DNA from: Antechinus flavipes
Lineage: Eukaryota
Length of the DNA: 64,000 bases
NCBI RefSeq assembly: GCF_016432865.1
Contig: NC_067404.1
Location: 85,188,001 to 85,252,000, forward strand
Direction: 5' to 3'
Below the pieces are notes generated by a model. The model was not told the DNA's origin, did not search any database, and worked only from the letters and a program-made list of their open reading frames with translations. The position numbers were made by a program, and so were the translations under genes. This document shows positions 3,001-26,935 of this stretch, piece by piece (position 1 is the first letter of the stretch; each line of letters opens with the position of its first letter).

Positions 3001-3899
3001 CTGCCCCCCGAAGGTACTCTCATCTCTCCAAAGCCAAGGAAGGTTCCTGGTGTCTGCCTCCTCCTCCACACTGACTTCTCTGGCCCTCCTCTCGGAACCA
3101 GGCAGGTACCAGGCGGATCTGGACCTTCTCCCCATGTCCACATAGCCAGCACTTCGATTTCACTCCCACTAACACTTTTCACTCAGGACCCTTACCCCCA
3201 CAGCCTTTTCATGGGTCCCCCTGCCTCCCCCTGGCCTTTTTCCGGCCCTCCCTGCTGGCCTGACCTTGTGGCTCCCTGCTCCAGAGGCAAAGATGTAAAT
3301 TCCTAAGGCGGGCCTTAAAATCCTGCCAGCCCGCACCAGGCTTTTCTGTATTTATTTTTAATGCGACCCCCCTTCCCGAGATCCACTGTTCGGGCACATC
3401 ACTATCTTGGTTGGCACCTTGCCCATTGAACGAAAGCTTGCCTAATACCAAGCTGACCTGCTCGGGGGGGAAGAGGAAGGGTGCTCCACGCCATATATGG
3501 AAGATTGGGGCCGGCTGCTGACGGGGAAGGGAAGGAGCATTTCTATGGCACCTACTGTGCACCAGGCATGGCATCGAGTACTCGTGCGATCACACGATGT
3601 GATCCGTCAGCTGGCATCACCAGTACCATCCTTCGACCACAGGGACAGAGAAGATGGCAGCCCAAAGCCCTCCCTGCCCACCCCAGGATACCTGGTGAGT
3701 GTCTGTAAGCATCAGCAGCCGGTCCCCGATGGTAGTAGGGCAGCGTGGTGGTGGCATCGCCAGCATCGGCCCCCTCGGGCCCCGAGAAGAAGAGTCCCGG
3801 CTCTTCGGTGGCACTGACGGAGGCCGACGGGGACAGCAAGGTAGGCTCAGCGAAAGAGGCCAGGGCCTCTGGCTCCCCCAGGCCGGGCGGGAAATCCAT
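98..3899 (-). CDS. GATA1: GATA-binding factor 1, 5 coding exons, ~401 aa
   Basis: Coding exons 3899-3692, 1618-1220, 1104-959, 871-746 and 424-98, all GT-AG with consistent phase (1206 nt). N-terminus MDFPPGLG...YRHSP; N-finger [19 protein letters not shown]; C-finger [41 protein letters not shown]; then [18 protein letters not shown]. Exon 2 acceptor likely at 3947/3946. Confidence 0.97.
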
Positions 3900-4456
3900 G
3901 GGGGCTCCCCGACGGTTGCGGCAGAAGCGGTGTCAGTGGTGCCTCCCTGAGGGGGGGGCAAGATCGTCAGCCCCAAGAGACCTTCCTAAGCATGGTCCTC
4001 GGGTGCTCTCCCAGCCATGGTCCAGACCCTACCCCAACTAAGTGGGCTTCCATGGGCCCAGAGCCTTGGGCTTCACACACAGGACGTGCTTGCCTGCAGG
4101 GTCCGTGCACATCTACATACGTGTAGACACACATTGGGATACAGACGCTCTAAATACACACATACACAAGCAGGATCAAGATCACATATGTACATTATAC
4201 AGGGTAACACACACACATAACACACATATGCTTGGGCAAGGGGGGGCAAAAAGCGGGGGGGGAGCACTCGGCCCCGGGGGAGACCGAGAATAAAAAGTGG
4301 GGGGGGCAGGGAAAGAGGCTCCTTCTTCTCCAGCCCTCCCCACTCTCTTCTCCCTCCCCCCCCCCCAGCCATTTTTCTTTTCTCATCTCCCTTTCTCGGA
4401 CCCTCCAGGCCCAGAGTGGGAGCTCCTTCTGTACCCTCCAGCCGGCCCTCCCCCAG

Positions 4457-4519
4457 TTATCACCCCAAGGCAGAGATAACCCTTATCTCAGGACTGGGGG
4501 ATATGAAAGCCTCTTATCA
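4457..4519. promoter_or_regulatory. Cluster of four WGATAR sites in GATA1 intron 1 (candidate intronic autoregulatory enhancer)
   Basis: TTATCA 4457-4462, AGATAA 4474-4479, TTATCT 4483-4488, TTATCA 4514-4519. AGATAA-CCC-TTATCT is a perfect inverted pair. Confidence 0.65.
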
Positions 4520-5001
4520 GCAGTCTGGGGCTAGTGTGTTCCCAGCAGGCTCAGGGGACTCCAGGCAGCTAGCTCCCAGCCCAGCCGGGCAGCCGGCTCC
4601 CATCCCAGCTTGGCCCAGTCCAGCCAGGTATGGTCCACCCCGACAGAATGGCTTTTAACTTGGAAGACTGGGGTGGGGGGTGGGGGGTGGATATGGGCTT
4701 GATTTTTTGCGAGGAAATCAGAGCTGAGGACCCTCAGGCAGGGCAGGTTCGGAGAAGGGGCTTGGGGGCCTCTGAGGGTTGGTCAGATCAGCCAGAAGAG
4801 GGATGAGAGGGGATCGGAAGGCCTGGAGATAGACTTAAGGGAGAGAAACAAGAGTTGGAGGAGGAACCCAGGTTGGAGTTCAAGCGCCCTCAAATATGGC
4901 AGGAGGGGGTAACTCAAAGATACAGCGTTAGGGCTTCGGGAGGATGAGACAGGGCTGATGTCCTCCCCAAATGGGCGGCTACAGGGCTCGGGGGCACTGA
5001 C

Positions 5002-5100
5002 CTGAGCAGGTGTTTAGGCCGAGGGAGGGGGGGCAGTCTCTCTTGGATCTCCTCAGGGTCCAGGCTGCGACCAAGACAACAGTGTCTCCCTCCCTCACAC
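5002..5100 (-). other. GATA1: Candidate non-coding first (erythroid IE-type) exon of GATA1
   Basis: Minus-strand donor CTCAG|GTCAGT at 5002/5001, downstream of CACCC-type boxes (~5130-5230) and the double-GATA element. The 5' end is a guess. Confidence 0.4.
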
Positions 5101-5656
5101 CCCCCTCCTGCTGTGGCTACAGGCGGGGCCAGGGGGTGGGGGGGGAGAAGGGGCCCAGCCTTGGGACCGCCCCCTGCTGGCACCAGTGCCCGAGCATGGC
5201 TTAGATGGCCGGGGGCACCTTCCTCACCCGCCCATCCCAGACCTCCCCCACCAGCCCATAGGCTTCTCCGTCTGCTCATCTCCTGCTCCCCGAGCTCTGC
5301 CCCACCTTTCCGTGCCGGTCTCTCAGAGCCTTGGTTGCCATTGCTCTGGAACGGTGGCCCTCCAGGCCTGGGGCCGGACCCGGTGCTCTCCTCTCCTCTC
5401 AGCCCGTGGGGCTGGCTGGTCTCTAGTTCATTGCAGTCCTGGAGCTTATGTGTACCTCCATGTCTCCCTCTGTCACTCTTGTTCTCCCTTAGGTTTTTCA
5501 GTGTGTGGGGGGTCAGATTAGGTCCTGGCAAGAAGGCCTATGATATACTGGGACAGATGCCCAAACTAAGATGTTGGGGAGGATGCGGGACACCCTTCCC
5601 CTTCCCCCTCCCCCCCACTTACACCAGCTCCCTGCTGGGCCAAGGCTGGGGCCTGC

Positions 5657-5676
5657 TGATAAGTCTTATCAGATGG
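5657..5676 (-). promoter_or_regulatory. GATA1 upstream palindromic double-GATA element
   Basis: Minus strand reads CCATCTGATAAGACTTATCAGC, nearly identical to the mouse/human Gata1 dbGATA element as recalled (CCATCTGATAAGACTTATCTGC). Confidence 0.85.
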
Positions 5677-6006
5677 AGGGCCGGACCTCGGCTGTTGGGG
5701 TTGAGGCAACTAGCAGCCCCACAGGAGGTTGGGGGAAAGAGAGCGGATACTGGGGCCTCCCTGGCCCCGTCTACACCCCTCACCCCCTGCTTTCAGCCCC
5801 TGTGTGACAGGGAAATTCATTCATCTTACTCTCTCCCCCTCCTCCCCCAAATAGTGGCACCTTGGTCCCCCTGCTCCGAGGGCAGAGAGCAGGACAGGTG
5901 GGAATCATCAAGCCCAAGTCACATCTGGGAAAACTGAGGCCTTCTTCCCATTTCCCAGTCACTTTGAATATTCCCACTGACCCTGCCTTTGGAGTCCAAT
6001 GTAGTG

Positions 6007-6012
6007 TTTATT
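6007..6012 (-). terminator. Likely CDK20 polyadenylation signal AATAAA
   Basis: First AATAAA seen on the minus strand (plus TTTATT) after the CDK20 stop, ~195 nt downstream. Confidence 0.6.
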
Positions 6013-6131
6013 GTTATCAGGGAAACTGAGGCACAGCCAAGGTTAGAAGTCCGTTCTCCTGAACCTCCAGAGGGAGGGAAGCCGGACGCCTGAGTCCCCT
6101 CCCACCCTGGCCGCAGGAAAGCCAGGGGGAG

Positions 6132-6154
6132 CAGCTGGGAGTGCCCAGATAAGG
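6132..6154 (-). promoter_or_regulatory. E-box/GATA composite; probable core of the GATA1 haematopoietic enhancer (G1HE/HS-3.5)
   Basis: Plus strand CAGCTG-N9-AGATAAGG. Minus strand CCTTATCTGGGCACTCCCAGCTGC resembles the recalled mouse G1HE core CCTTATCTATGCCTTCCCAGCTGC. Spacing fits the TAL1/E2A-LMO2-LDB1-GATA1 composite. Confidence 0.75.
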
Positions 6155-6205
6155 CAATCTCTTGGGGCCAGGCAGAGCTGGGTGGAGGCCAGGGCAGTGG
6201 GAGGC

Positions 6206-9200
6206 TCATCCCTCCGGGAGGTAGGGCCGAATCAGCTCCGGATCTGGCAACGACTCAGCCAGGGGCTGCTCTACCCTGAAGTCGTGGACATGAGGAGGGC
6301 CTGGTCGGGCCTTGGGGCCAGGCCCCCCCCCACGCTGTGGAATGGGCAGCTCTGAGGGGTGGGCTGGCAGCGGGGCTCTGAAGAAGTACTCATGTAGCAG
6401 GGCCTGTGGGGATGTGGGGGGAGTGAGAAGGGATGGCCCGGCCCGGCCCAGTCCTGTCTCACCCCTATATCCCTGGCTCCATCCCTTGTGAGTTCCCCAG
6501 TGGGCGCCGCTTCCTCCACCTTCAAAGCAAGGGCTGGCTGAATTCGCCCGACACAAAAAAACTGGAGGTGGGGGTGGCGACAGGGGGGAGAAACGGTTCC
6601 CCTTTGAGCACTGTGGCAAGCCGGCAGATTTTTATCAAGCCCCAGGCACAGTTAAAGAGAAACAAGGGGACTGTTCCTCAAAGGTGTCCATTAAAGCGGG
6701 CCCCCTACTGACTTAAGTGAAGGAGACGTGCAAACATTTGGACAGTAAGCAATTTTTATCTGTTCGTTAAAGCAGGCCCCCTAAGGGCACAAAACAGGAT
6801 CCCATCAGACATGAACTGGGACTTTAGTCAAGGGCAGCTGAAACCCCACTCCTAGCTGTTCGGTAAAACAGGTCCACCAAGGCCCCCAAGCTCGGCGAGC
6901 CTCTGGTGGTCTGCTCTGAGTTACCTTATTTAAGTACATGGAGGCGAGCCAGCCCTCTAGAGCGGCCAGTGGCCTCTGAGACTGAGGGACTTGCCTCAGG
7001 GCACCCAGCTGGTCCTAATAAGAGGCAGGATTTGAACCCAGGGCTTCAGACCGCAAAGCCAAGAGCCCTTCCCATGTATCAAAGCAGATCCACTCGGGTC
7101 TCTCATGGGATCGTCTGTCAGTTCTGAGCCTCTGCTAAGATGCTATTTCCTCACCCTAAAGCCAGAAGCATACTCTTCCTCTTCTGATCTCAAAGCACCT
7201 GTGACCTCCTCTTTCCAGATGTGATGTGCCAACCTGCTGGGGCCTCGGATCACGTTCCTTGGCCAGGGGAAGGGGAATCCTTAACTCCAGAGGGCGGAGC
7301 GGGCCAGCTGCCTCGCCTTCCCCCTGCTTGCCTTCCCAGCACTAGCAACTCACTCCCCAGCAAAGTAGCTTTCTAAAGGAGGTTTTGGGCTCGTGTGGGT
7401 GGCGGGGGAGAGGAGAACAGGCCCTTCTCTGTCACACGGGAAGAAGCGGGAGGCCTGGGCGGAGCCCACCCTGGGCTGGAGCTGGGCGGGGGTCCTTCTG
7501 TAACAGTTCTGTTCCTTATCTCCCCCCCCCCAGTTGTGCTGGGCTTCCTTTCACATACCAGCAGTAGTAACAGAAAGTATCCTATGCCAGCCAATCAGTG
7601 TTCCCATAAGGCAGCTCTGTGGGCCCTCCCCTGGCCCTGGCCTTGGGTGGCCCTGTCAGCGGCTCTCTAGGTCCTGCCTGCCCACTCATCTCCAGGCCCT
7701 TCACCCCTTGCCCTGTTCACACTGGGCCCCCACCTGTGCCTCTTTTCACCCCAGGTTCTCGAGTTTGGTGCCTGCTGCTGTTTGGCCTCCAAGCCCTCTG
7801 AGCTCTCTGCTCGCCCCTTGCCCAGCCGTGCCCGTGGGGGCCGCCCCAAGGACCCGTTCTCCCACCCCCATTGGGCCTTCGCCATAGCTAGCGGCCCCTC
7901 CCTTCTCTCACTCCCTTCTTGGCTGAGAAAACTCAAGGCCGTCTTTGGGGAGTTCCCACATTTCTCTACGTCTCCTTGCCAAGCCTGCCCTACTTTCTCC
8001 TCTCCCACTCTGACCAGGGAAGTCCCATGGAATCACTCCTTCCGGTCCCCCCCCTGACCCCCCCCCCCCGTCTCTCTTTTTGTACATCTCCGAACTCCAA
8101 AGGCCGCAAGCTCTGCTGCCCCCCCACCCGGTTTTTAGTCCCTCACAATCAGACTCGCAGTAGCCTTCTCTGGCTCCTTTTCTGCCCCCCAAGTGTGGGC
8201 GCTCCCGTGGGATGGGGCCTCGCACAGAGTAGGAGCTTCTTGACCATTTGGACACAGGTGATTTCCAAATCCCCAGCCTCTCTGGCCCTCCAGTCAGATG
8301 GCACACCATCAGCTGTTGGCTGGCTATCTCCTCCTAGGTGTCCCTTGTGCATCTCAAAGTCCTGGCAGAGAAGGCTCAGTACCCCCAGGCCCCGGCCAGT
8401 GGGGTGCGAACTCCCGCCCCTGGGTTCTCTTGGGCCGTGGCCACTGGCCCGTTAGCTAAGCCTTGGCTCCGCAGGGAACTCCCTTCCTCTAGTCTTTCCG
8501 CTCAGCCCGTGTCATTGAGACGAGGCCTTTGGGGTGCTACAGACCCCCTAGCCCGGTTGTGCGGGTCCAGGCACTGCTCCCTGAACTCAGCCTCCTGCTA
8601 CCTACTGAGGCTCCCTCAGAACTGCCAGGAGCCTGAGTTCTTTGTACTTATTGATCTATGTGGGCCACTAGGTGGCACTAGAACGGCTAGAACAGCAGCC
8701 TGGGGAGCTGCAAGACTCATCGTGGTGAGTTCAAATCCAACCTTGGACCCTTACTATCTGTGTGACCCTAGGCAAGTCACTTCACCCTGTTTGCCTCAGT
8801 ACCCTCATCTGTAAAAGGAGCTGGAGAAGGAAAGGGTCGACCGCTTCGAGATCTCTGCTGAGAAAACCCCCAATGGGCCACGAAACGTGACTGAAAAATG
8901 ACCGCATGACAACTGACCTATGCGGGTTGTGTACCGGGAGTGGGGGGGGGGGGCGCGGAGAGAAGGGGGAGTCAGCTCCCTGACGGCTTGTCTCATCTGT
9001 GTCCCTAGGACAGGCCTGGGGGCACGGTCACTATCTGGCTAGAGATGGGAGGGGGCTCCCCGAGGAGGGGGAAGTCAGGTCCACTTCCTCTTAGCCTGTG
9101 GAGGTGCACCTGGGAGAGGGGAGGGGGATACCTGATCGGCCTGGATCCGACTTCGAGGGGGGTAGACAAGAAAGCGACTCAGGAGCTGGAGGGCTTCGTA

Positions 9201-11953
9201 GGAGGCGTCGGGCAGCACCTCGCGCAGGGGCAGGGGCAGCTGCTCCTTGAATGAGATCTTGTTGTAATCTGGGAGCTCGGTGATCCCCTGGGGAAGGACC
9301 AGAGGGACGCAGGAATTATGGGGCCTCGACGATGACCTGGCGGAAGCCCTCTCCCGCTCCCCTGCTACTCACTGGCCACACCCGAGGGCTGGGGGTCCCG
9401 AGGACCCGCAGGACACAGCACAGCTGTTCGATGTCATTCTCCCCGGGGAAAAGAGGGGAGTTGTTCAGGAGCTCCCCGAAGATGCAGCCCACGGCCCTGC
9501 GGGCAAGAGTAGACACGGCTCGGGCGGCTGTGGCCCACCAGCCAGCTGCCACCTCCCGGGCCCCCACTTGGGCCTGCTCGAGGCCCTCTTCCTCTCACTC
9601 CCTGCCTTACCATAGGTCCACACCCTCATCATACTGCCTGGCTCCGTACAGAAGTTCTGGAGCCCGATACCACCTGCAGCCGAGGGAGGAAACGTCGTTA
9701 GCGGTGGAGAGGGGGGAAAGGTGGTGGCCCCGATGGGGCTAAAGAAGCGTGCTGACAAATGCCTCCTATCCCAAGCCCGCAAGTGATGCTGCTCCCCCGT
9801 CCCCCACCCCCCATCCTGACTCGCTCACACTTGTCCCTGCTACCAGGCTTGGGCATGTACCTCGTGGCCACCTGGTGGCTATAAAGTCGGTCACCCTTGT
9901 GGGAGAAAACACGAGCAAGGCCAAAGTCGGCAATCTTCAGCTGACCCGAGGAGCTGAGGAGCAGGTTGGCTGGCTTCAGGTCCTGAGGAAGGAAGAAGGA
10001 AAGAAAGAGAGGAAAGGAGGGGGGGGGGAGGAGAAGGGAAAGAGAGGAAACAAGGAAGAAGGGAGGAGGAAGGAGGAAGGAAAAAAGGAAGAAAGAAGTC
10101 TAAGGCCCAACATCCAGTCCCCTTGCCAAGGCTCAACTGAGCCCCCCGCCCCCGGCCCCACCCATCCCCAGCCCAGCACCCCCCAAAAAAAGCTTGGGCA
10201 CTGGCCCTCTGGGTATCCATACCCGGTGTACAATGTTGTTGGCGTGGCAGAAGGCTACACCCTTGAGCAGCATTTGCATGTACGCTTTAACCTGAGCTGG
10301 GGCCAGAGGCCGCTTCCCATGCCGGATGACCTCAGACAGGTCAGAGAGCATGAACTCAAAAGCCAGGACGAAGCCTGCTCCATGCGGGAACACAGCCTTC
10401 AACTTCACCACCTGTGGGTGCCAGGGACACCTGATAAGGGCACTTAGAGAGTTTTACAGAAGGCAGGAAATCAAGGCCGAAGGGATCGCTACACCCGAGC
10501 CCGCCTGCCACCAGACTTCTCTTATTATCTTTGGGAAACTGAGGCTCGAGGTGTTGCCGGATCATCCAGCCAGACCTGAGCCCAGACTCGTTTCCTAGGC
10601 TTGAGGAAAGCGTGAGACCTGAAGGTGATTCAAGACCGCCTGGCCTGGGCCTCCATCAAAAGGCGCCCGCGGCTCAGCGTCCGCAGAATCGTCTCACGGG
10701 CCGAGAAGCAAAGGCATCAAATGCCCCAGGCTTCACGGGATGAAAGCAAGGGAGCTCCGTGGGTGCCCAGGGACAGACCAACCTATTCAGGGCAACTAAG
10801 GCAAAGCCACTTACAGATGGGCGCATCGAAGCCCTCTGCAGCTGGGCCCCGTTGTACGCAGAGCACCAGCCTCAGGCACCTACAGGCTGGATGAGGCTGG
10901 CAAGGCCCTCAGGGCCGTCGGACAAGACTGGTCCGACCTCCGAGGATGCTCGGGAGGATCACGTGTTCGGGACACGCTTACTTAGCACAGCGCCTAGCGC
11001 CTGGTGCCTGGTACTTGCAGGCTCTTAATAAATGCTTGTTCTCTGCCCCTGTCCACCTCCGCCCACCGCCAGCGTGGAAACATCGATTCAATTTATAGAC
11101 CAGGAGAAACCAGAGCAAAGCAAAAGGTGGCCAGTCTGTCAACAAACATTTCTTAAGGACCTACTGTGTGCCAGGTGCTGGGGATACAAAGAAAGGCAGA
11201 CCAAAGTCCCTGCCCTTGATGTGAAGGAAGAAACATGGGAGGTGGCAGGCAAGGAAGGAAAAGGAGGCGGGCAAGGAAAGGCCTTTCCTGCTCTTAGTGG
11301 CAAAGGCCCAAAGCCTGGAGGCCACGGAACGGCATAAATGCCAATCAGAAGACTCCATTTCGGGGAAGCCCAGAGGCCCAGAGGGGCGATGAGGTCAGTC
11401 TGGGCTGGAGACGTCCAGAAGCCCCTGGGTGATGGCTGCCAATGGCCGAGGAGAAAGGGCAAGGCTGGCCGGGTACATCTGACGATGGTTCACCAAGAGA
11501 TGTGCGCTGAACCCATGAGTGCCGATAAGCTCATCAAGGGTTGGACGAGAGAGTTCGAGACAGAGCTTGGTTTGTCCCCCGTGGTTCGTGGGCCGCTAGG
11601 TGGCTTGGAGGAGAGAGCATGGCCCCAGGTAAAAAGACCTGAATTCGAATCCAGCCTCAGACACATGTGATGCCAGGCAAGTCACGTCATCTCTGTCTGC
11701 CTCGGCTTCCTCAAATGAACAATGAGGACACAAAGAGCACCTCCCTGAAGTGAGATCGTATTTGGGAAGTGCTTAGTCCACTGCCTGGCACATAGTAGAC
11801 ACCATATTAATACTGGCAACGGTGATGGTATTGGTGAAGATGCAGCAGCAAGGGAGTCCAAGGAGTCAGAGATGTAGAAGGAGAATTAGGGGAGAGGGGA
11901 GAGACAGAGACGTAGGGAGGAGGGCATAAAACAGAAATACAGAGAGAAGGGGG

Positions 11954-11993
<40 letters not shown>

Positions 11994-14900
11994 GAGACAA
12001 GGAAAGAGAAAAAAGAGAAGTACAGAGGAGGGAGCAAGAGACAGATGCAGAGAGAAGGAAAGAGAGAAAGAAGGAAGGAGAGAAAAAAGAGAGATGTAGA
12101 GAGAAGGAAAGAGAAAGAGAAGAAAACAGATACAGAGGAAATGAAAGAGAAGGAAGGAGAAAGAGAGAGATGTAGAGAGAAGAAAAGGACAAGAGACAGA
12201 AGGAGGGAGCAAGATAAAGATCTAGAGAAAAAGAAAGAGAAATAGATGTAGAGAAGGAAATGCAGAAAGAGAGAAGGAAGGAGAGAAAAAAGAGATAGCG
12301 ATATAGAGAAAAGGAAAGAGAGAAGAAAACAGATAGATATATAGAGAAAATGAGAGGAGGGAGCAAGAGAGATGTATAGAGAAGGAAAGAGAGGAGAAAA
12401 AAGATGTAGAGAGGAGAAAAGAGAAAGAAAGAGAAGCAGAGAGGAGGGACCAAGAGAGAGATGCAGAGAGAAGGAAAGAGAAAGAGAGATGTGTAGAGAG
12501 GAGGAAAGAGAGAAGAGAAGGAAGGAGAGAAAAAGAAAGATAGAGGAAAGGAAAGAGAAAGAGAAGAAAACAGATAGATATGTAGAGAACATGAAAGAAG
12601 GAAAGAGAAAGAGATAGAAAGAGAAGGAAAGAGAAGAAAGAGAGATGGAGATGTAGAGAGAAGGAAAGAAAAAGAGAAGTAGAGAGGAGGGAACAAGAGA
12701 GAGATGCAGAGAGAAGAGAAGAAAAAAGAGAGATGTAGAGAAGAGGGAGCAAGAGAGATGTAGAGAGAAGGAAAGAGAAGAAAGAGAGAGAGAGATGTAG
12801 AGAGAAGGAAAGAGAAAGTGAGAAGTAGAGAGGAGGGAACAAGAAAGAGATGCAGAGAGAAGGAAAGAGAGGAGAAAAGAGATATAGAGAGGAAGAAAGA
12901 GAGACAGAGATGTAGAGAGAAGGAAATAGAGACAGATAGAAGGAAGTAGAGAGAGAGATGTAGAGAGAAGGAAAGAGAGAAGAGAAGGAAGGAGAGATAA
13001 AAGATATAGAAAAAAGGGAAGAGAAAGAGAAGAAAACAGATATGTAGAGAAAATGAAAGAGAAAGAAAGAGAAAGATTTAGAGAGAAGGAAAGAAGAAAG
13101 AGAGATAGAGATGTAGAGAGAAAGAAAGAGAAAGAGAAGTAGAGAGGAGGGAACAAGAGAGAGATGCAGAGAGAAGGAAAGAGAAAGAGAGATGTAGAGA
13201 AAAGGAAAGAGATGTAGAGAGAAGGAAGAGAGAAAAAAGAGAGAGATATAAAGAAAAGGAAAGAGAAAGAGAATAAAACAGATATGTAAAGAAAATGAAA
13301 AAGAAGGAAAGAGAAAGATGTAGAGAGAAGGAAAGAGAAGAAAGAGAGATAGAGATGTAGAGAGAAGGAAAGAGAAAGAGAGATGTGTAGAGAGGAGGAA
13401 AGAGAGAAGAGAAGGAAGGAGAGAAAAAGAAAGATAGAGGAAAGGAAAGAGAAAGAGAAGAAAACAGATAGATATGTAGAGAACATGAAAGAAGGAAAGA
13501 GAAAGAGATAGAAAGAGAAGGAAAGAGAAGAAAGAGAGATGGAGATGTAGAGAGAAGGAAAGAAAAAGAGAAGTAGAGAGGAGGGAACAAGAGAGAGATG
13601 CAGAGAGAAGAGAAGAAAAAAGAGAGATGTAGAGAAGAGGGAGCAAGAGAGATGTAGAGAGAAGGAAAGAGAAGAAAGAGAGAGAGAGATGTAGAGAGAA
13701 GGAAAGAGAAAGTGAGAAGTAGAGAGGAGGGAACAAGAAAGAGATGCAGAGAGAAGGAAAGAGAGGAGAAAAGAGATATAGAGAGGAAGAAAGAGAGACA
13801 GAGATGTAGAGAGAAGGAAATAGAGACAGATAGAAGGAAGTAGAGAGAGAGATGTAGAGAGAAGAAAAGGACAAGAGACAGAAGGAGGGAGCAAGATAAA
13901 GATCTAGAGAAAAAGAAAGAGAAATAGATGTAGAGAAGGAAATGCAGAAAGAGAGAAGGAAGGAGAGAAAAAAGAGAGATAGAGATGTAGAGAAAAGGAA
14001 AGAGAGAAGAAAACAGATAGATATATAGAGAAAATGAGAGGAGGGAGCAAGAGAGATGTATAGAGAAGGAAAGAGAGGAGAAAAAAGATGTAGAGAGGAG
14101 AAAAGAGAAAGAAAGAGAAGCAGAGAGGAGGGACCAAGAGAGAGATGCAGAGAGAAGGAAAGAGAAAGAGAGATGTGTAGAGAGGAGGAAAGAGAGAAGA
14201 GAAGGAAGGAGAGAAAAAGAAAGATAGAGGAAAGGAAAGAGAAAGAGAAGAAAACAGATAGATATGTAGAGAACATGAAAGAAGGAAAGAGAAAGAGATA
14301 GAAAGAGAAGGAAAGAGAAGAAAAGAGAGATGGAGATGTAGAGAGAAGGAAAGAAAAAGAGAAGTAGAGAGGAGGGAACAAGAGAGAGATGCAGAGAGAA
14401 GAGAAGAAAAAAGAGAGATGTAGAGAAGAGGGAGCAAGAGAGATGTAGAGAGAAGGAAAGAGAAGAAAAGAGAGAGAGAGATGTAGAGAGAAGGAAAGAG
14501 AAAGTGAGAAGTAGAGAGGAGGGAACAAGAAAGAGATGCAGAGAGAAGGAAAGAGAGGAGAAAAGAGATATAGAGAGGAAGAAAGAGAGACAGAGATGTA
14601 GAGAGAAGGAAATAGAGACAGATAGAAGGAAGTAGAGAGAGAGATGTAGAGAGAAGGAAAGAGAGAAGAGAAGGAAGGAGAGATAAAAGATATAGAAAAA
14701 AGGGAAGAGAAAGAGAAGAAAACAGATATGTAGAGAAAATGAAAGAGAAAGAAAGAGAAAGATTTAGAGAGAAGGAAAGAAGAAAAGAGAGATAGAGATG
14801 TAGAGAGAAAGAAAGAGAAAGAGAAGTAGAGAGGAGGGAACAAGAGAGAGATGCAGAGAGAAGGAAAGAGAAAGAGAGATGTAGAGAAAAGGAAAGAGAT

Positions 14901-17900
14901 GTAGAGAGAAGGAAGAAGAGAAAAAAGAGAGAGATATAAAGAAAAGGAAAGAGAAAGAGAATAAAACAGATATGTAAAGAAAATGAAAAAGAAGGAAAGA
15001 GAAAGATGTAGAGAGAAGGAAAGAGAAGAAAAGAGAGATAGAGATGTAGAGAGAAGGAAAGAGAAAGAGAGATGTGTAGAGAGGAGGAAAGAGAGAAGAG
15101 AAGGAAGGAGAGAAAAAGAAAGATAGAGGAAAGGAAAGAGAAAGAGAAGAAAACAGATAGATATGTAGAGAACATGAAAGAAGGAAAGAGAAGAGAGAGA
15201 AGAGAAGGAAAGAGAAGAAAAGAGAGATGGAGATGTAGAGAGAAGGAAAGAAAAAGAGAAGTAGAGAGGAGGGAACAAGAGAGAGATGCAGAGAGAAGAG
15301 AAGAAAAAAGAGAGATGTAGAGAAGAGGGAGCAAGAGAGATGTAGAGAGAAGGAAAGAGAAGAAAAGAGAGAGAGATGTAGAGAGAAGGAAAGAGAAAGT
15401 GAGAAGTAGAGAGGAGGGAACAAGAAAGAGATGCAGAGAGAAGGAAAGAGAGGAGAAAAGAGATATAGAGAGGAAGAAAGAGAGACAGAGATGTAGAGAG
15501 AAGGAAATAGAGACAGATAGAAGGAAGTAGAGAGAGAGATGTAGAGAGAAGGAAAGAGAGAAGAGAAGGAAGGAGAGATAAAAGATATAGAAAAAAGGGA
15601 AGAGAAAGAGAAGAAAACAGATATGTAGAGAAAATGAAAGAGAAAGAAAGAGAAAGATTTAGAGAGAAGGAAAGAAGAAAAGAGAGATAGAGATGTAGAG
15701 AGAAAGAAAGAGAAAGAGAAGTAGAGAGGAGGGAACAAGAGAGAGATGCAGAGAGAAGGAAAGAGAAAGAGAGATGTAGAGAAAAGGAAAGAGATGTAGA
15801 GAGAAGGAAGAAGAGAAAAAAGAGAGAGATATAAAGAAAAGGAAAGAGAAAGAGAATAAAACAGATATGTAAAGAAAATGAAAAAGAAGGAAAGAGAAAG
15901 ATGTAGAGAGAAGGAAAGAGAAGAAAAGAGAGATAGAGATGTAGAGAGAAGGAAAGAGAAAGAGAAGTAGAGAGGAGGGAACAAGAGAGAAGTAGAGAAG
16001 AGGGAACGAGAGATGCAGAGAGAAGGAAAGAGAAAAAAGAGACAGAGATATAGAGAAAGAAAGAGAAGAAAACACACATGTAGAGAAAATGAAAAAGAAG
16101 GAAAGAGAAAGATGTAGAGAGAAGGAAAGAGAAGAAAAGAGAGATGGAGATGTGGAGAGAAGGAAAGAGAAGAAAAGAGAGATGAAGATGTAGAGAGAAG
16201 GAAAGAGAAGAAAAGAGAGATGGAGATGTAGAGAAGAAGAGAAGTAGAGAGGAGGGAACAAGAGAAAGATGCAGAGAGAAGAGAAGAGAAAGAGAGATGT
16301 CGAGAAGAGGGAGCAAGAGAGAGCTGTAGAGAGAAGGAAATAGAGAAAAGAGAGATAGAGAAAAGGAAAAAGAGAGAAGAAAACAGAGATAGATATGTAG
16401 AGAAAATGAGAGAAGGAAAGAAAAGATAGAGATGTAGAGAGAAGGAAAGAGAAAGAGAGAAGGAAGGAGAGAAAAAAGATATAGAGAAAAGGAAAGAGAA
16501 AGAGAAGAAAACAAATATGTAGAGAAAATGAGAAGGAAAGAGAGAAAGAGATGTAGAGAGAAGGAAAGAGAAGAGAGAGATGTAGAGAGAAGGAAAGAGA
16601 AAGAAGTAGAGAGGAGGGAACAAGAAAGATGCAGAGAGAAGGAAAGAAAGGAGAAAAGAGATGTAGAGAGGAGGAAAGAGAGACAGAGATGTAGAGAGAA
16701 GGAAATAGAGATAGAAGGAAGGAGAGAAAGAGCGAGATGTAGAGAGAAAGAAAGAGGAAGAGAGAAGGAAGGAGAGAAAGAGACGTAGAGAGGAGAGAAA
16801 AGAGAGATATAGAGAGAAGGAAAGAGAGAAAAAAGATAAGTGATATAGAGAAAAGGAAAGAGAGGAGAAAACAGATATGTAGAGAAAATGAAAGAGAGAA
16901 GGAAAGAGAAAAGAGATAAAGAGAGAAGGAGGAAGCGAGAGAGAGATGTAGAGAGGAGGTGGCAAGAGAAATGTAGAGAGAAGGAAAGAGAGATGTAGAG
17001 AGAAGGAAATAGAGAAGGAAGGAGAGAAAAGAGAGATGTAAAGAAAAGGAAAGAGAGAAGAAAACAGATATATAGAGAAAATGAAAGAGAAGGAAAGAAA
17101 GAGATATAGAGAGAAGGAGGAAGCGAGAGAGAGATGTAGAGAGGAAGCGGCAAGAGAAATGTAGAGAGAAGGAAATAGAGAAAGAGAGAAGGAAGGAGAG
17201 AAAGAGAGAGAAAAGGAAAGAGAAGAAAACATGTAGCGAAAATGAGAGAAGGAAAGAGAAAAGAGATGTAGAGAGAAGGAAAGAGAAGAAAAGAGAGATA
17301 GAGATGTAGAGAGAAGGAAAGAGAGGAGAAAAGAGATGTAGAGAGGAGGAAAGAGAGACAGAGATGTAGAGAAGGAGATAGAGAAGGAAGGAGAGAAAGA
17401 GAAAGATGTAGAGAGAAGGAAATAGAGACAGAGAGAAGGAAGGAGAGAAAGAGAGATGTAGAGAGAAAGAAAGAGAGAAGGAAGGAGAGAAAAGATAAGA
17501 GATATAGAGAAAAGGAAAGAGAAAGAGAAGAAAACAGATATAGAGAAAATGAAAGAGAAGAAAAGAGAAAGAGAGATATAGAGAGGAGGGAGCGAGACAG
17601 ATGTAGAGAAGAGGAGGCAAGAGAAATGTAGAGAGAAGGAAAGAGATGTAGAGAGAAGGAAATAGAGAAAGAGAAGGAAGGAGAGAAAAAGAAAGAAGAA
17701 AGGAGAGAAAAAAGAGATGTAAAGAAAAGGAAAGAGAAAGAAGAAAACATGTAGAGAAAATGAAAGAGAAGGAAAGAGAAAGATGTAGAGAGAAGGAAAG
17801 AGAAGAAAAGAGAGCTAGAGATGTAGAGAGAAGGAAAGAAAGAAGTAGAGACGAGGAAACAAGAGAGAGATGCAGAGAGAAGGAAAGAGAAAGAGAGAGA

Positions 17901-20724
17901 TGTAGAGAGGAGGGAACAAGAGAACTGTAGGAAGGAAAGAGATGCAGAGAGGAGGGAAAGAGAGGAGGGAGAAATACAGAGAAGAAAATACAGATGTAGA
18001 GAGGAGGGAGCAAGAGAGATGTAGAGAAGAGGGAGTAAGAGAAACATAGAGAAAAGGAAAGAAAGAGATGTAGAGAAAAGGAAAGAGGGAAAGAAAAAAA
18101 GGATGTAGAGAGGAGGGAGCAAGAGAGCTGTAGAGAGGAGAGAGAAGAAAAGAGAGACAAATGTAGAGAAAAAGAAAAGAGAAGCAAAGAGTGAGAGATG
18201 TAGAGAGGAGGGAGCAAGNNNNNNNNNNNNNNNNNNNNNNNNNNNNNNNNNNNNNNNNNNNNNNNNNNNNNNNNNNNNNNNNNNNNNNNNNNNNNNNNNN
18301 NNNNNNNNNNNNNNNNNNNNNNNNNNNNNNNNNNNNNNNNNNNNNNNNNNNNNNNNNNNNNNNNNNNNNNNNNNNNNNNNNNNNNNNNNNNNNNNNNNNN
18401 NNNNNNNNNNNNNNNNNNNNNNNNNNNNNNNAAGGGCAGAAGACAAGAATCTCATCTTCAAGGAGAGGGTGATCCACAGTGTCCAAGGCTCCTGGGAGAG
18501 CGGGGCAAATGAGCCACAGGAGGAAAGGCCATTGCGCCGGGCAGCTTCAGAGAGGTGAGGATGGAGGCCAGACGGACACAAGAGTCCCAACACAAGGAAG
18601 AAGAGGTGAGCAAAAGCCTCCGACCAGTGCACACTCAAGCCAACCCCTCTCCTCCCCCCATTTTACAGAATAAGGAAAACAGGCCAGAATGTGCTTTGAG
18701 ATCCTCCCTTCCCAATTAGTTTCTCCTACTTGGTTCCAAGATGAGGATCCAGGTTCTTGGGTACTTAGGAGGACATGAAACCCAAGCTCTCCTGACTCCT
18801 GTGAACCCCCTCTTGATGCTACTGAATAGGGAACCCCAAGAGCCAATGCTGCTTGGGGCTCATCCTTGGGGCCCGGGAAGCTGAGGCCTGAGGGCACTTT
18901 GCAGCCACTTAAAAGTCTTCTCTTGAGCTCTGTGATCCCAGGAGCCCAGACTTAGCCCCAGAATGAATTTAAGGCTAGCCCCCAGTTTCCAGACGAGTGA
19001 ATGGGACCAGAAGGGAGGCGGAGGAAGTGACTTACATACTGGTTGTCCTCAATCTCCTGGAGGGCCTTGATCTCCCGCAGGGCCTGGTTGGGAATGCCGT
19101 CCTCCAGCCGTCGCAAGGCAACCTTCTTCAGAGCCACCGTCTCCCCCGTCTAGGAGAGAAAGACACCCCCAGACACAGAGCCTGAGGCAGGCAGGTAGGG
19201 CAACGGCAAGGCCGAGAAACCGGGTGGTTGTGCTTCAGTCACGTTCTAATCTTCACGACCCCATCGGGGGTTCTCCTGGCAGAGACTCTGGAGTGGATTG
19301 CCATTTCCTTCTCCAGCTCATTTGACAGGTGAGGAAACTGAGGCAGACAGAGTGAAGGGACTCGGCCAGGGTCACATGTCTGAGATCGAATTAGGACTCA
19401 GCAAGATGGGTCTTTCTGACTCCAGATCCAGCCCCATTAACTCAAGGAACCAGATCTCTGGCCACTCAAGCATTTGCTAAGGGCTTCATATATGACCCCA
19501 TATTATGAGGTCATGCCTACCCCCAGCACAACTCAGACAAAACCAGATTCACCCCTGTCCTCTCCGAGCTTACATTCTCTAAAGAAATGGGCATTTTGTG
19601 GCTGGCAAATGTCTACAATGTGAGCCTGGGTCACCTCGAGGGTAGAGAGCCACCTGGAGGGCTCGGGAAAGGCCCTGGGGAGGAAGGAGGGAGCCAGAGT
19701 TCCACCGAAGCACCGTCCCCAGAGGCCGGGGTGCGGCTCAGAGACAGACAAAGCCCAGCTCTTACTGGGCCTGAGAGGAAGGAGAGAGGGATGGGCTGTG
19801 GGAAAGGCTTGGAATGCCTGTGGGTTTTATATTAGATCCCGGAGGTAAGGAGAAACCACGCGTGCCAGGAGGGCGATGTGGTCAGACCTGCTCTGCAGGC
19901 TGAAGGGAGGATGGCCTGGAGGAGGAGGGAAAGCCCGGGGGTGGGCGGGCCATCGGTCTGGGTGGGAAGTGATCTCAAGGGCCTGCACCAGTGGGGGGCA
20001 GTGGGAGAGGAGAGATGCCGTCAGGCAGACATGACAAGATTGGCAAGTGACTGGAGGCCATCCAGCAATCAAGATGTTGAGAAGAATGGAGGGCGGGGAG
20101 AGCTGGGAAGCTCCCGGTGTCTGTTTTCTGCCCGTGGGGGTGCTTTGGAGGCCGGAGGGAATCCAGGGGTCAGAAGCCTGCTGTCCAGTAGCGGTTAAAG
20201 GGTACAAATCTACTATCCGAGATAGTGATGGCAGCCAGAGATGGCACTGAGCCAGCCACACGGGGATGAGGGCTGGATCCCAGAAATCACCAACCCAGAG
20301 AGAAGGAGAGGGCCCAGGCGACCCGCAGAGAGGGAGCCCTGGGACAAAAGGGAGAGAAGGCGACGGAAAGGCAGGGGAAGGGAGGGAAGAGGTCCAAAGG
20401 AGACGGGCATGAAATACCGAAGGGAGGAAATGAGAGTGAGACGCTGCCCAGAGAGCAAAGGACTGGAAAGAGAGGGAGCACGAAGGAGGCGAGGAAAGGA
20501 ACGCCAGAGGACGAAGATGAGCGCGAAGAGGCAGATCGCTGATAAAGACAGCCGAGGGAGTGGACAAGGGGGAATGGTGTGGGGGCACACTGGAGGGATT
20601 TCTTTAAGGGCAGCTGCTTGCTTCCTGCGTCATCCTGGTCCCCACTTACCTCCACATGCTTGGCCTTGAACACGATGCCATGGGCCCCTTCACCTATCCG
20701 GCCCAGGATGCTGTACTGGTCCAT
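6206..20724 (-). CDS. CDK20: Cyclin-dependent kinase 20 (CCRK), 8 coding exons, 346 aa
   Basis: Exons 20724-20650, 19149-19036, 10411-10223, 9982-9861, 9673-9611, 9496-9373, 9287-9132 and 6403-6206 (1041 nt), all GT-AG and in phase. Motifs: [55 protein letters not shown], and C-terminal [11 protein letters not shown]. Confidence 0.97.
8662..8915 (+). mobile_element. MAR1-type CORE-SINE
   Basis: tRNA-like head, CORE segment (ctgtgtgaccctaggcaagtcacttcaccctgtttgcctcag...catctgtaaaa) and RTE/Bov-B-like tail (gagctggagaaggaaa...gaaaacccc...gactgaaaaatgac). Confidence 0.7.
11590..11720 (+). mobile_element. MIR/CORE-SINE fragment
   Basis: gacctgaattcgaatccagcctcagacac...ggcaagtcac...gcctcggcttcctcaaatg. 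Confidence 0.55.
11880..18218. repeat. Array A: ~6.3 kb+ GA-rich tandem repeat with higher-order structure (CDK20 intron 2)
   Basis: Recurring core GATGTAGAGAGAAGGAAAGAG with variable GA spacers. An identical 81-aa ORF recurs at 12372 and 14056 (1684-bp period), and shorter ~0.9 kb recurrences are visible. The array runs into an assembly gap. Confidence 0.95.
18219..18431. other. Assembly gap (N run)
   Basis: 213 N bases; the true length of array A is therefore unknown. Confidence 0.99.
19225..19440 (-). mobile_element. MAR1-type CORE-SINE
   Basis: Reverse complement of the MAR1 tail and core (ttgccatttccttctccagctcatttgacaggtgaggaaactgaggcag). Confidence 0.65.
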
Positions 20725-26700: not shown

Positions 26701-26935
26701 TCATCCTCCCCTTCCTAGCACCTGGGATCTCCCTTCCCCCTGATCTCTCCTTCTTAGCACTAGGGGTCTCCCTTCTCTCTCATCTTCCCCTCCCTAGCAC
26801 TCAGGATCTCCTTTCCCTCTCATCCCCCTCTAGTACTTGGGGTCTCCCTTCTCTCTGATCCCTCCTTCTTAGCACTTGGGGTTTCCCTTCCCTCTAGTCC
26901 CCCCTCCCTAGCACTCAAGATCTCTCTTCCTTCTC
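20781..26935. repeat. Array B: ~6.1 kb CT-rich minisatellite upstream of the first CDK20 coding exon
   Basis: Monomers built on TAGCAC(T/C)(A/T)GGGGTCTCCCTTC with alternating spacers (ctctgatccctccttct / tctctcatcctcccc / cctctcatccccctc). These give ~57 bp and ~110-115 bp composite units; the 57-bp period is visible as a 19-aa repeat in ORF 25012-25257. Confidence 0.97.

What the first reader, a model, noticed from the sequence alone, without database searches (positions are those of the whole stretch)
5657..6403. GATA1 haematopoietic enhancer core embedded in the CDK20 3' UTR, ~460 bp from the double-GATA element
Seen: CAGCTG-N9-AGATAAGG (6132-6154) lies 52 nt after the CDK20 stop (6206) and before its AATAAA (6007-6012); the dbGATA palindrome is at 5657-5676. 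Known: in mouse, G1HE is ~3.9 kb upstream of the erythroid exon and ~3 kb from dbGATA, and the intervening DNA has been implicated in methylation-dependent Gata1 silencing in stem cells. Inference: this marsupial has a naturally compact G1HE-dbGATA-CACCC module in which the master erythroid enhancer doubles as the transcribed 3' UTR of a ciliary kinase gene. That could couple CDK20 transcription or termination to GATA1 activation, and it may be the ancestral therian layout.
Basis: partly seen in the sequence, partly recalled or inferred. Interest (0 to 1): 0.85.

Follow-up and report, generated by a model that had tools for sequence, protein, structure and literature searches.

The report
GATA1 enhancer inside CDK20's 3' UTR
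In this marsupial the conserved upstream enhancer of the red-blood-cell master gene GATA1 lies in the last exon of the neighbouring kinase gene CDK20, just after its stop codon; platypus has the same layout, so placental mammals are the ones that later separated the two genes.

Summary
Observation confirmed. The window is Antechinus flavipes X-chromosome DNA. GATA1 and CDK20 both lie on the minus strand. CDK20 stops at 6208-6206. CAGCTG-N9-AGATAA is at 6132-6152, AATAAA (minus strand) at 6012-6007, and the palindromic double GATA at 5658-5670.

The composite is more than a motif. A 50-70 bp block around it aligns to the single equivalent element upstream of GATA1 in a eutherian (Thomomys) and in platypus. 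These alignments beat all 200 shuffles (z 7.2 and 5.4). They are collinear with the double GATA, the CACCC promoter (platypus only) and the intron-1 GATA palindrome (Thomomys only).

The stretch from stop to AATAAA is 98.5% identical between dasyurid and koala. That exceeds every coding exon of both genes; intron identity is 57-72%. No poly(A) hexamer precedes the motif in the three marsupials or in platypus.

CDK20-GATA1-HDAC6 adjacency holds in dasyurids, koala, wallaby and platypus, and TIMM17B-CDK20 adjacency holds in turtle. The layout is therefore ancestral to mammals and the eutherian one is derived. Enhancer-to-double-GATA spacing is 0.48 kb in marsupials, 1.4 kb in platypus and 3.7 kb in Thomomys.

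No transcript 3' ends, factor occupancy or enhancer activity were tested. Functional coupling between the two genes remains speculation. Two other first-reader notes on this same window touch the CDK20 locus and the inversion.

The parts
6206..6403 (-). CDK20 terminal-exon coding part (ALLHEYFF...PYLPEG) plus stop TGA at 6208-6206; acceptor AG at 6405-6404
   Evidence: tblastn of Antechinus CDK20 P0305; sequence read; ORF
5985..6205 (-). Putative CDK20 3' UTR (stop to about 20 nt past AATAAA); the 3' end is inferred
   Evidence: The only PAS-like hexamer after the stop is AATAAA at +196, at the same offset in Sminthopsis and koala. 98.5% identity to koala over 199 nt with no gaps.
6127..6194 (-). 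G1HE-core homology block shared with the Thomomys and platypus GATA1 upstream regions
   Evidence: blastn; Smith-Waterman against shuffles; alignments A1 and A3
6132..6152 (+). E-box CAGCTG (6132-6137), 9-nt spacer, AGATAA (6147-6152); reads TTATCT-N9-CAGCTG in GATA1 sense
   Evidence: same orientation and spacing in koala, platypus and Thomomys
6007..6012 (-). AATAAA poly(A) signal of CDK20
5605..5698 (-). Double-GATA block; palindrome GATAAGACTTATC at 5670-5658 in GATA1 sense
5114..5193 (-). GATA1 IE proximal promoter block with CACCC (5138-5134) and GC box (5130-5121)
   Evidence: 74% over 86 bp to platypus; 96-97% to koala; sequence
5002..5090 (-). Probable non-coding exon IE ending at donor CAG|GTCAGT (GT at 5001-5000); the 5' end is not mapped
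   Evidence: Inference from sequence and the conservation peak
4454..4521 (-). Intron-1 element with palindromic GATA (4475-4487)
   Evidence: 80% over 70 bp to Thomomys intron 1
3660..3899 (-). GATA1 exon 2 coding part, ATG at 3899
   Evidence: tblastn of P0001

Best explanation
Window 6127-6194 is the marsupial orthologue of the GATA1 haematopoietic enhancer core (G1HE, also called HS-3.5). It is a GATA-plus-E-box composite of the type bound by GATA2/GATA1 together with TAL1/E2A/LMO2/LDB1. It would activate the GATA1 erythroid (IE) promoter about 1.05 kb downstream, working with the double GATA (5658-5670), the CACCC/GC box (about 5120-5140) and the intron-1 GATA palindrome (4475-4487). Physically it sits in the terminal exon of CDK20, 51 nt past the stop codon and 140 nt before the only poly(A) signal, so it is almost certainly transcribed as CDK20 3' UTR. 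The arrangement CDK20 stop, then G1HE, then double GATA, then GATA1, then HDAC6 was inherited from the common ancestor of living mammals. Eutherians broke it with a rearrangement whose breakpoint falls immediately 5' of the enhancer core; it inverted the GATA1-HDAC6-PCSK1N block and left CDK20 on an autosome. Shown here: motifs, homology, collinearity, extreme conservation, gene order in five non-eutherian species, and positions of poly(A) signals. Inferred: factor binding, enhancer activity, the actual CDK20 3' end, and the nature of the eutherian rearrangement.
For: Gene models: GATA1 and CDK20 exons lie on the minus strand. The window is 100% identical to Antechinus flavipes CM028223.1 over 13.9 kb.
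Motif: TTATCT-N9-CAGCTG occurs exactly once upstream of GATA1 in each species. Positions are window 6152-6132, Sminthopsis, koala L005:17357, platypus L006:4609 and Thomomys L003:1691.
Collinearity: there are four collinear same-strand blastn hits between the window and Thomomys (G1HE, double GATA, intron-1 palindrome, exon 2). The window and platypus share CDK20 last exon, double GATA, promoter and exon 2.
Significance: the 216-nt post-stop segment scores 43 against 10 kb of Thomomys (200 dinucleotide shuffles: mean 25.6, sd 2.4, max 34). It scores 39 against the platypus intergenic region (26.1, 2.4, max 35). Both alignments land on the composite. A 48-bp core, GCCTG..CCCC..TGAT.CC.TTATCT..CAGCTG.CTCCC, is shared by all three lineages.
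Constraint: identity to koala is 98.5% from stop to PAS. CDK20 exons score 84-98%, GATA1 exons 87-91% and the CDK20 last intron 57-72%.
Poly(A): AATAAA at +196 is the first of 12 hexamer variants after the stop in the window, Sminthopsis and koala. In platypus the first are CATAAA at +602 and AATAAA at +673, beyond the motif at +225.
Synteny: CDK20-GATA1-HDAC6 holds in Sminthopsis, wallaby, koala and platypus. PQBP1-TIMM17B-CDK20 holds in turtle and in the window. Thomomys has no called gene and no CDK20 remnant in the 10 kb upstream of GATA1.
Literature: G1HE lies 3.9 kb upstream of IE in mouse and human (PMC12142303). It contains E-boxes and a GATA box (PMC5621702). E-boxes sit 7-12 bp from GATA in erythroid composites (PMC5220053).
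Against: No RNA evidence for the CDK20 3' end could be obtained. No chromatin, occupancy or reporter data exist for any marsupial. Only one eutherian was compared, and its element was identified as G1HE by position (8.3 kb before the ATG, 3.65 kb before the double GATA) and motif. It was not aligned directly to the mapped mouse or human sequence, which I could not fetch. The cross-lineage homology is short (50-70 bp at about 75%). Monodelphis is unresolved: its GATA1-like model is anomalous, and no CDK20 was listed within 10 kb upstream of the model or inside its 42-kb span. Part of the extreme marsupial conservation could reflect CDK20 mRNA functions rather than enhancer function.
Confidence: 0.8

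Rival explanations
1. The block is conserved because it is a CDK20 3' UTR regulatory sequence (microRNA or RNA-binding-protein sites, or poly(A) control). On this reading the GATA/E-box composite is incidental to GATA1.
For: It lies between the stop and the poly(A) signal on the CDK20 strand. The adjoining last coding exon is also unusually conserved, at 97.4% against 84-87% for exons 4 and 7.
Against: The same core is retained upstream of GATA1 in Thomomys, where no CDK20 exists nearby. High conservation continues past the poly(A) signal to the double GATA, at 92-97%. The block is collinear with the other GATA1 elements. No Rfam family reaches its threshold here. A dual constraint remains possible.
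Confidence: 0.1
2. The element is the G1HE orthologue, but CDK20 mRNA ends before it by using a non-canonical signal. In that case the enhancer is intergenic and not part of the UTR.
For: No transcript data were available, and short UTRs and non-canonical signals do exist.
Against: None of 12 PAS hexamer variants occurs in the 51 nt between stop and motif in any of three marsupials. AATAAA at +196 is invariant in position. Platypus shows the same logic, with its first signals at +602 and +673.
Confidence: 0.07
3. The match is chance or convergence: a GC-rich region happens to contain an E-box-GATA pair near GATA1.
For: The motif alone is only about 4-fold enriched in the window. A second, non-conserved composite exists at 7516-7536.
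Against: The alignment score exceeds all 200 shuffles in two independent outgroups and falls at the syntenic place. Orientation, the 9-nt spacing and the CAGCTG E-box are identical in all lineages.
Confidence: 0.03

Closest known systems
Mouse/human Gata1 haematopoietic enhancer (G1HE, HS-3.5/HS1)
   Same: It lies upstream of the IE promoter and is collinear with the double GATA, CACCC and intron-1 GATA elements. It has a GATA box plus a CAGCTG E-box. A core of about 50 bp is homologous to the eutherian element.
   Different: It lies 1.05 kb rather than about 3.9 kb from IE, and 0.46 kb rather than about 3 kb from the double GATA. It sits in the terminal exon of another gene, and the roughly 3 kb eutherian spacer is absent. 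Activity is untested.
Synthetic GATA-1 minigene of four discrete cis elements (Ohneda et al. 2002, cited in PMC5621702; details from my own knowledge)
   Same: The same four elements (G1HE core, double GATA, CACCC, intron-1 GATA) are brought close together. In the marsupial this happened naturally, within 2.3 kb.
   Different: The marsupial module is natural, about 60 My stable and 92-99% conserved between orders. It is overlapped by CDK20 transcription, and the spacer DNA is itself conserved rather than deleted at will.
G1MDR, the methylation-determining region of eutherian Gata1 (PMC12905634)
   Same: It occupies the same topological interval, between G1HE and the proximal promoter elements.
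   Different: The marsupial interval is 461 bp with 9 CpG (observed/expected 0.23). The Thomomys interval is 3.6 kb with 29 CpG. Outside the double-GATA block, no marsupial-to-eutherian homology was detected in the spacer.
Exonic or 3' UTR-embedded enhancers of neighbouring genes ('eExons'; from general knowledge)
   Same: A transcribed exon of one gene carries an enhancer for the adjacent gene.
   Different: Here the host part is non-coding UTR, and the target promoter is only about 1 kb downstream on the same strand. CDK20 termination must therefore occur across the GATA1 promoter region.

Membership tests
G1HE (Gata1 haematopoietic enhancer) | Lies 5' of the GATA1 IE promoter, in order G1HE, double GATA, CACCC, exon IE, intron-1 GATA, exon 2 | tested here: met
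   Order in the window: 6142, 5664, 5136, about 5002-5090, 4481, 3899. The order is collinear with Thomomys and platypus.
G1HE (Gata1 haematopoietic enhancer) | Essential GATA box with adjacent E-box(es) | tested here: met
   AGATAA and CAGCTG are 9 nt apart, with the same orientation and spacing in four lineages. The feature is described in PMC5621702 and PMC5220053.
G1HE (Gata1 haematopoietic enhancer) | Sequence homology to the eutherian core beyond the motifs | tested here: met
   75.7% over 70 bp to Thomomys, z 7.2, with 0 of 200 shuffles reaching the score. The Thomomys element was identified by position and motif, not by experiment.
G1HE (Gata1 haematopoietic enhancer) | About 3.9 kb upstream of exon IE | tested here: not met
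   About 1.05 kb in the window. I treat this as lineage variation, since the figure is 2.4 kb in platypus.
G1HE (Gata1 haematopoietic enhancer) | DNase hypersensitivity, GATA/TAL1 occupancy and enhancer activity in erythroid/megakaryocytic cells | not testable with these tools
   No marsupial chromatin or reporter data were accessible.
CDK20 3' UTR | The host gene is CDK20, intact and intron-containing | tested here: met
   All coding exons map to the window. NCBI names the product CDK20, 346 aa. It is 83-85% identical to a human CDK20 isoform.
CDK20 3' UTR | Lies between the stop codon and the first poly(A) signal on the coding strand | tested here: met
   Stop at 6208-6206, motif at 6152-6132, AATAAA at 6012-6007, with no earlier hexamer variant.
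CDK20 3' UTR | Present in mature CDK20 transcripts | not testable with these tools
   No transcript contig for marsupial CDK20 was found: the dasyurid protein P0305 is on record only from NCBI genomes.
E-box-GATA composite element (TAL1/GATA complex site) | CANNTG lies 7-12 bp 5' of WGATAR on the same strand | tested here: met
   CAGCTG-N9-AGATAA on the plus strand. The spacing range is from PMC5220053.

The most novel reading that the evidence does not exclude
The overlap is functional rather than merely historical. On this reading, CDK20 transcription and termination across G1HE, the double GATA and the IE promoter set the default state of GATA1 in non-erythroid cells. Possible routes are gene-body-type methylation or transcriptional interference, and read-through may yield CDK20-GATA1 conjoined RNAs, as in the koala gene model. 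When the eutherian rearrangement cut CDK20 away right at the enhancer's 5' edge, this control was lost. It was then replaced by the roughly 3 kb methylation-determining spacer that is now needed to silence Gata1 in stem cells.
Probability: 0.12. Interest if true: 0.8.

Novelty: new variant of a known kind. Interest (0 to 1): 0.5.

Why it matters
G1HE is one of the best-studied lineage enhancers, and its spacing from the promoter has been given functional weight in mouse through the methylation-determining region.

This work shows that non-eutherian mammals run GATA1 from a module three to four times more compact. The enhancer there is part of another gene's terminal exon, and this is the ancestral state. 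That gives a natural experiment on three questions:
- whether the eutherian spacer is needed for stem-cell silencing;
- how an enhancer tolerates being transcribed and polyadenylated over;
- how a chromosomal breakpoint can fall within tens of bases of an enhancer without destroying it.

It also explains why this stretch of about 200 nt is more conserved between marsupial orders than the coding exons around it.

Tried and rejected
- Papers: Nishimura 2000 (DOI and PMC85182) and Suzuki 2009 (PMC2643832) are not held. I therefore could not align directly to the mapped mouse core.
- Literature searches for G1HE, or for CDK20 together with GATA1 and marsupial or synteny, found no description of this layout.
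- Three contig look-ups were wasted on non-longest isoforms. The Dama dama GATA1 was not on record.
Wallaby therefore contributes gene order only, and opossum stays unresolved.
- Antechinus locus L001 turned out to be the window itself. It is not counted as independent evidence.
- Turtle: the 10 kb downstream of CDK20 shows no G1HE homology (scores 27 and 31, within the shuffle range) and no GATA1.
- Thomomys: no CDK20 remnant upstream of G1HE, and no platypus-Thomomys homology 5' of the core.
- Rfam: only sub-threshold noise in 4500-7500.
Full report
**What is in the window.**
The window is Antechinus flavipes X-chromosome sequence. It is 100% identical over 13,899 bp to CM028223.1, so locus L001 is the window itself and not independent evidence. 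Everything relevant is on the minus strand.
- GATA1 has its zinc-finger exons at 602-1105 and its exon 2 ATG at 3899.
- CDK20 is intact and intron-containing. Its coding exons run from about 20.7 kb down to a terminal exon at 6403-6206, with stop TGA at 6208-6206.
- Further along lie TIMM17B (minus strand, about 36.6-38.0 kb), PQBP1 (plus strand, 39.2-41.7 kb), SLC35A2, PIM2 and OTUD5.

**The observation.**
- CAGCTG is at 6132-6137, followed by nine bases and AGATAA at 6147-6152.
- AATAAA on the minus strand is at 6012-6007.
- The palindrome GATAAGTCTTATC is at 5658-5670.
- The composite lies 51 nt past the CDK20 stop and 461 nt from the double GATA.

Motif counts alone are only suggestive. 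Palindromic GATA occurs twice against 0.03 expected. The E-box-GATA composite occurs twice against 0.5 expected.

**Is it the G1HE orthologue?**
I fetched GATA1 or CDK20 loci from Sminthopsis (L002), koala (L005), platypus (L006), a eutherian, Thomomys bottae (L003), and a turtle (L004).

Read in GATA1 sense, the composite is TTATCT-N9-CAGCTG. It occurs exactly once upstream of GATA1 in each mammal, with the same orientation, E-box and spacing.

blastn gives four collinear same-strand matches between the window and Thomomys:
- 6194-6127 to L003:1649-1717 (G1HE);
- 5698-5646 to L003:5321-5369 (double GATA);
- 4521-4454 to L003:7522-7590 (intron-1 palindromic GATA);
- exon 2.

The 216 nt after the CDK20 stop score 43 against 10 kb of Thomomys upstream DNA. 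The 200 dinucleotide shuffles gave mean 25.6, sd 2.4 and maximum 34. The same segment scores 39 against the platypus CDK20-GATA1 interval (26.1, 2.4, maximum 35). Both alignments fall on the composite.

A 48-bp core is shared by monotreme, marsupial and eutherian. In Thomomys the homology starts 11 nt after the position of the marsupial stop codon.

The Thomomys element lies 3.65 kb before the double GATA and 8.3 kb before the ATG. That fits the published mouse geometry: G1HE about 3.9 kb upstream of IE (PMC12142303), and an exon I-exon II intronic sequence whose analysed region extends to +4691 from the TSS (PMC5621702). I could not fetch the mapped mouse or human sequence, so this last link rests on position and motif.

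**Constraint.**
Dasyurid-to-koala identity, in 100-bp bins, is 57-72% in the CDK20 last intron. It is 97-99% across 6000-6300, 92-97% at the double GATA, 96-97% at 5000-5199 and 95% at the intron-1 element.

By segment:

| Segment | Identity to koala |
|---|---|
| Stop to poly(A) signal (199 nt, no gaps) | 98.5% |
| CDK20 exons | 84-98% |
| GATA1 exons | 87-91% |

The proximal block at 5114-5193 carries a CACCC and a GC box and aligns to platypus. A good donor, CAG|GTCAGT at 5004-4997, probably ends exon IE. This last point is inference.

**Is it in the CDK20 3' UTR?**
Among 12 poly(A) hexamer variants, the first after the stop is AATAAA at +196. It sits at the identical offset in the window, Sminthopsis and koala, and nothing precedes the motif at +56.

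In platypus the composite is at +225 and the first signals are CATAAA at +602 and AATAAA at +673 (sequence).

In both lineages, therefore, the enhancer core should be transcribed as CDK20 3' UTR. I found no transcript data, so this remains an inference.

**Evolution.**
CDK20, GATA1 and HDAC6 lie in that order on one strand in several species:
- Sminthopsis;
- tammar wallaby (gene order only; 2,265 bp from stop to ATG);
- koala;
- platypus (5.6 kb from stop to ATG).

The turtle has PQBP1(-), TIMM17B(+), CDK20(+), and the window shows the same trio. Thomomys has no gene call and no CDK20 remnant in the 10 kb upstream of GATA1. The human CDK20 sits on a 150.6-Mb contig.

The adjacency is therefore ancestral to mammals and the eutherian state is derived. 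From general knowledge of human Xp11.23, the eutherian order TIMM17B-PCSK1N-ERAS-HDAC6-GATA1 implies an inversion of the GATA1-HDAC6-PCSK1N block. One breakpoint falls immediately 5' of the G1HE core. Platypus and Thomomys share no homology 5' of the core.

Spacing from G1HE to the double GATA is 477-482 bp in marsupials, 1,418 bp in platypus and 3,655 bp in Thomomys. The extreme compaction is thus marsupial-specific on present evidence. Opossum is unresolved.

**Mechanism.**
- Most likely (0.8): an orthologous GATA/TAL1-type enhancer acts on the IE promoter 1.05 kb away, in a natural equivalent of the four-element GATA1 minigene, and is physically overlapped by the CDK20 terminal exon.
- Rivals: a pure 3' UTR function (0.1), early CDK20 polyadenylation (0.07) and chance (0.03).
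- Speculation: CDK20 must terminate within about 0.9 kb of the GATA1 promoter, so interference, gene-body methylation or read-through are plausible. The spacer has 9 CpG in 461 bp.
- One hint: the NCBI koala model P0189 joins CDK20 exons 1-7 to GATA1 exons 2-3 out of frame. That model may be an artefact of a frameshift in the koala last exon.

**Novelty.**
The enhancer, the composite motif and exon-embedded enhancers are all known. I found no paper describing G1HE inside the CDK20 3' UTR, its ancestry or its ultraconservation in marsupials. I rate it a new variant of a known kind, of moderate interest.

Two other first-reader notes on this same window bear on the locus. One covers the repeat arrays around CDK20 exons 1-2. 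The other covers CDK20 at an inversion breakpoint. The second agrees with what I derived from tools.

Noticed in passing
window 11941-17913 and 20818-26915; N gap 18219-18431: Two repeat arrays of about 6 kb flank CDK20 coding exons 1-2 (20724-about 20650 and 19149-19033). One is purine-rich (GA-type units) and the other pyrimidine-rich (40/80-bp units). The only assembly gap in the window lies between them.
   Followed up: partly
L005 10001-22511 (koala): The NCBI koala 'CDK20 isoform X1' (P0189, 421 aa) joins CDK20 exons 1-7 to GATA1 exon 2 (starting upstream of its ATG) and exon 3 in a foreign frame. The koala CDK20 last exon shows a frameshift between L005:17151 and 17185. This could be a read-through transcript or an annotation artefact.
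   Followed up: partly
window 7516-7536 (minus strand): A second E-box-GATA composite, CAACTG-N9-AGATAA, lies in the CDK20 last intron. Sminthopsis has it with N10, and the koala scan did not find it.
   Followed up: partly
window 6600-6799 and 7000-7199: Two islands in the CDK20 last intron are 83-89% identical to koala, against a 57-72% intron background. Their function is unknown.
   Followed up: no
window 5617-5622 (minus strand): A GTAAGT donor-like motif about 40 bp downstream of the double GATA (GCTGGTGTAAGTG) is conserved in koala and platypus (GCTGGCGTAAGTG) but not in Thomomys. It may mark an alternative first-exon donor.
   Followed up: no
L004 16573-16598 (turtle): A palindromic GATAGCGCTATC overlapping CTATCT-N7-CATGTG lies 842 nt after the turtle CDK20 stop. 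No alignable homology to G1HE was found.
   Followed up: partly
(contig lengths): In Gopherus (25,971,409 bp), Rhineura (232,427,479 bp) and the shark Scyliorhinus torazame (113,643,705 bp), CDK20 and the GATA1-type gene lie on contigs of identical length. This hints at very old linkage.
   Followed up: no
Monodelphis locus (no DNA): The opossum 'GATA1-like' model is 142 aa spread over 42 kb next to HDAC6, with a GPCR gene upstream and no CDK20 listed. Yet opossum CDK20 is on a contig of the same length (89,414,197 bp). This is either an assembly/annotation problem or a didelphid rearrangement.
   Followed up: no
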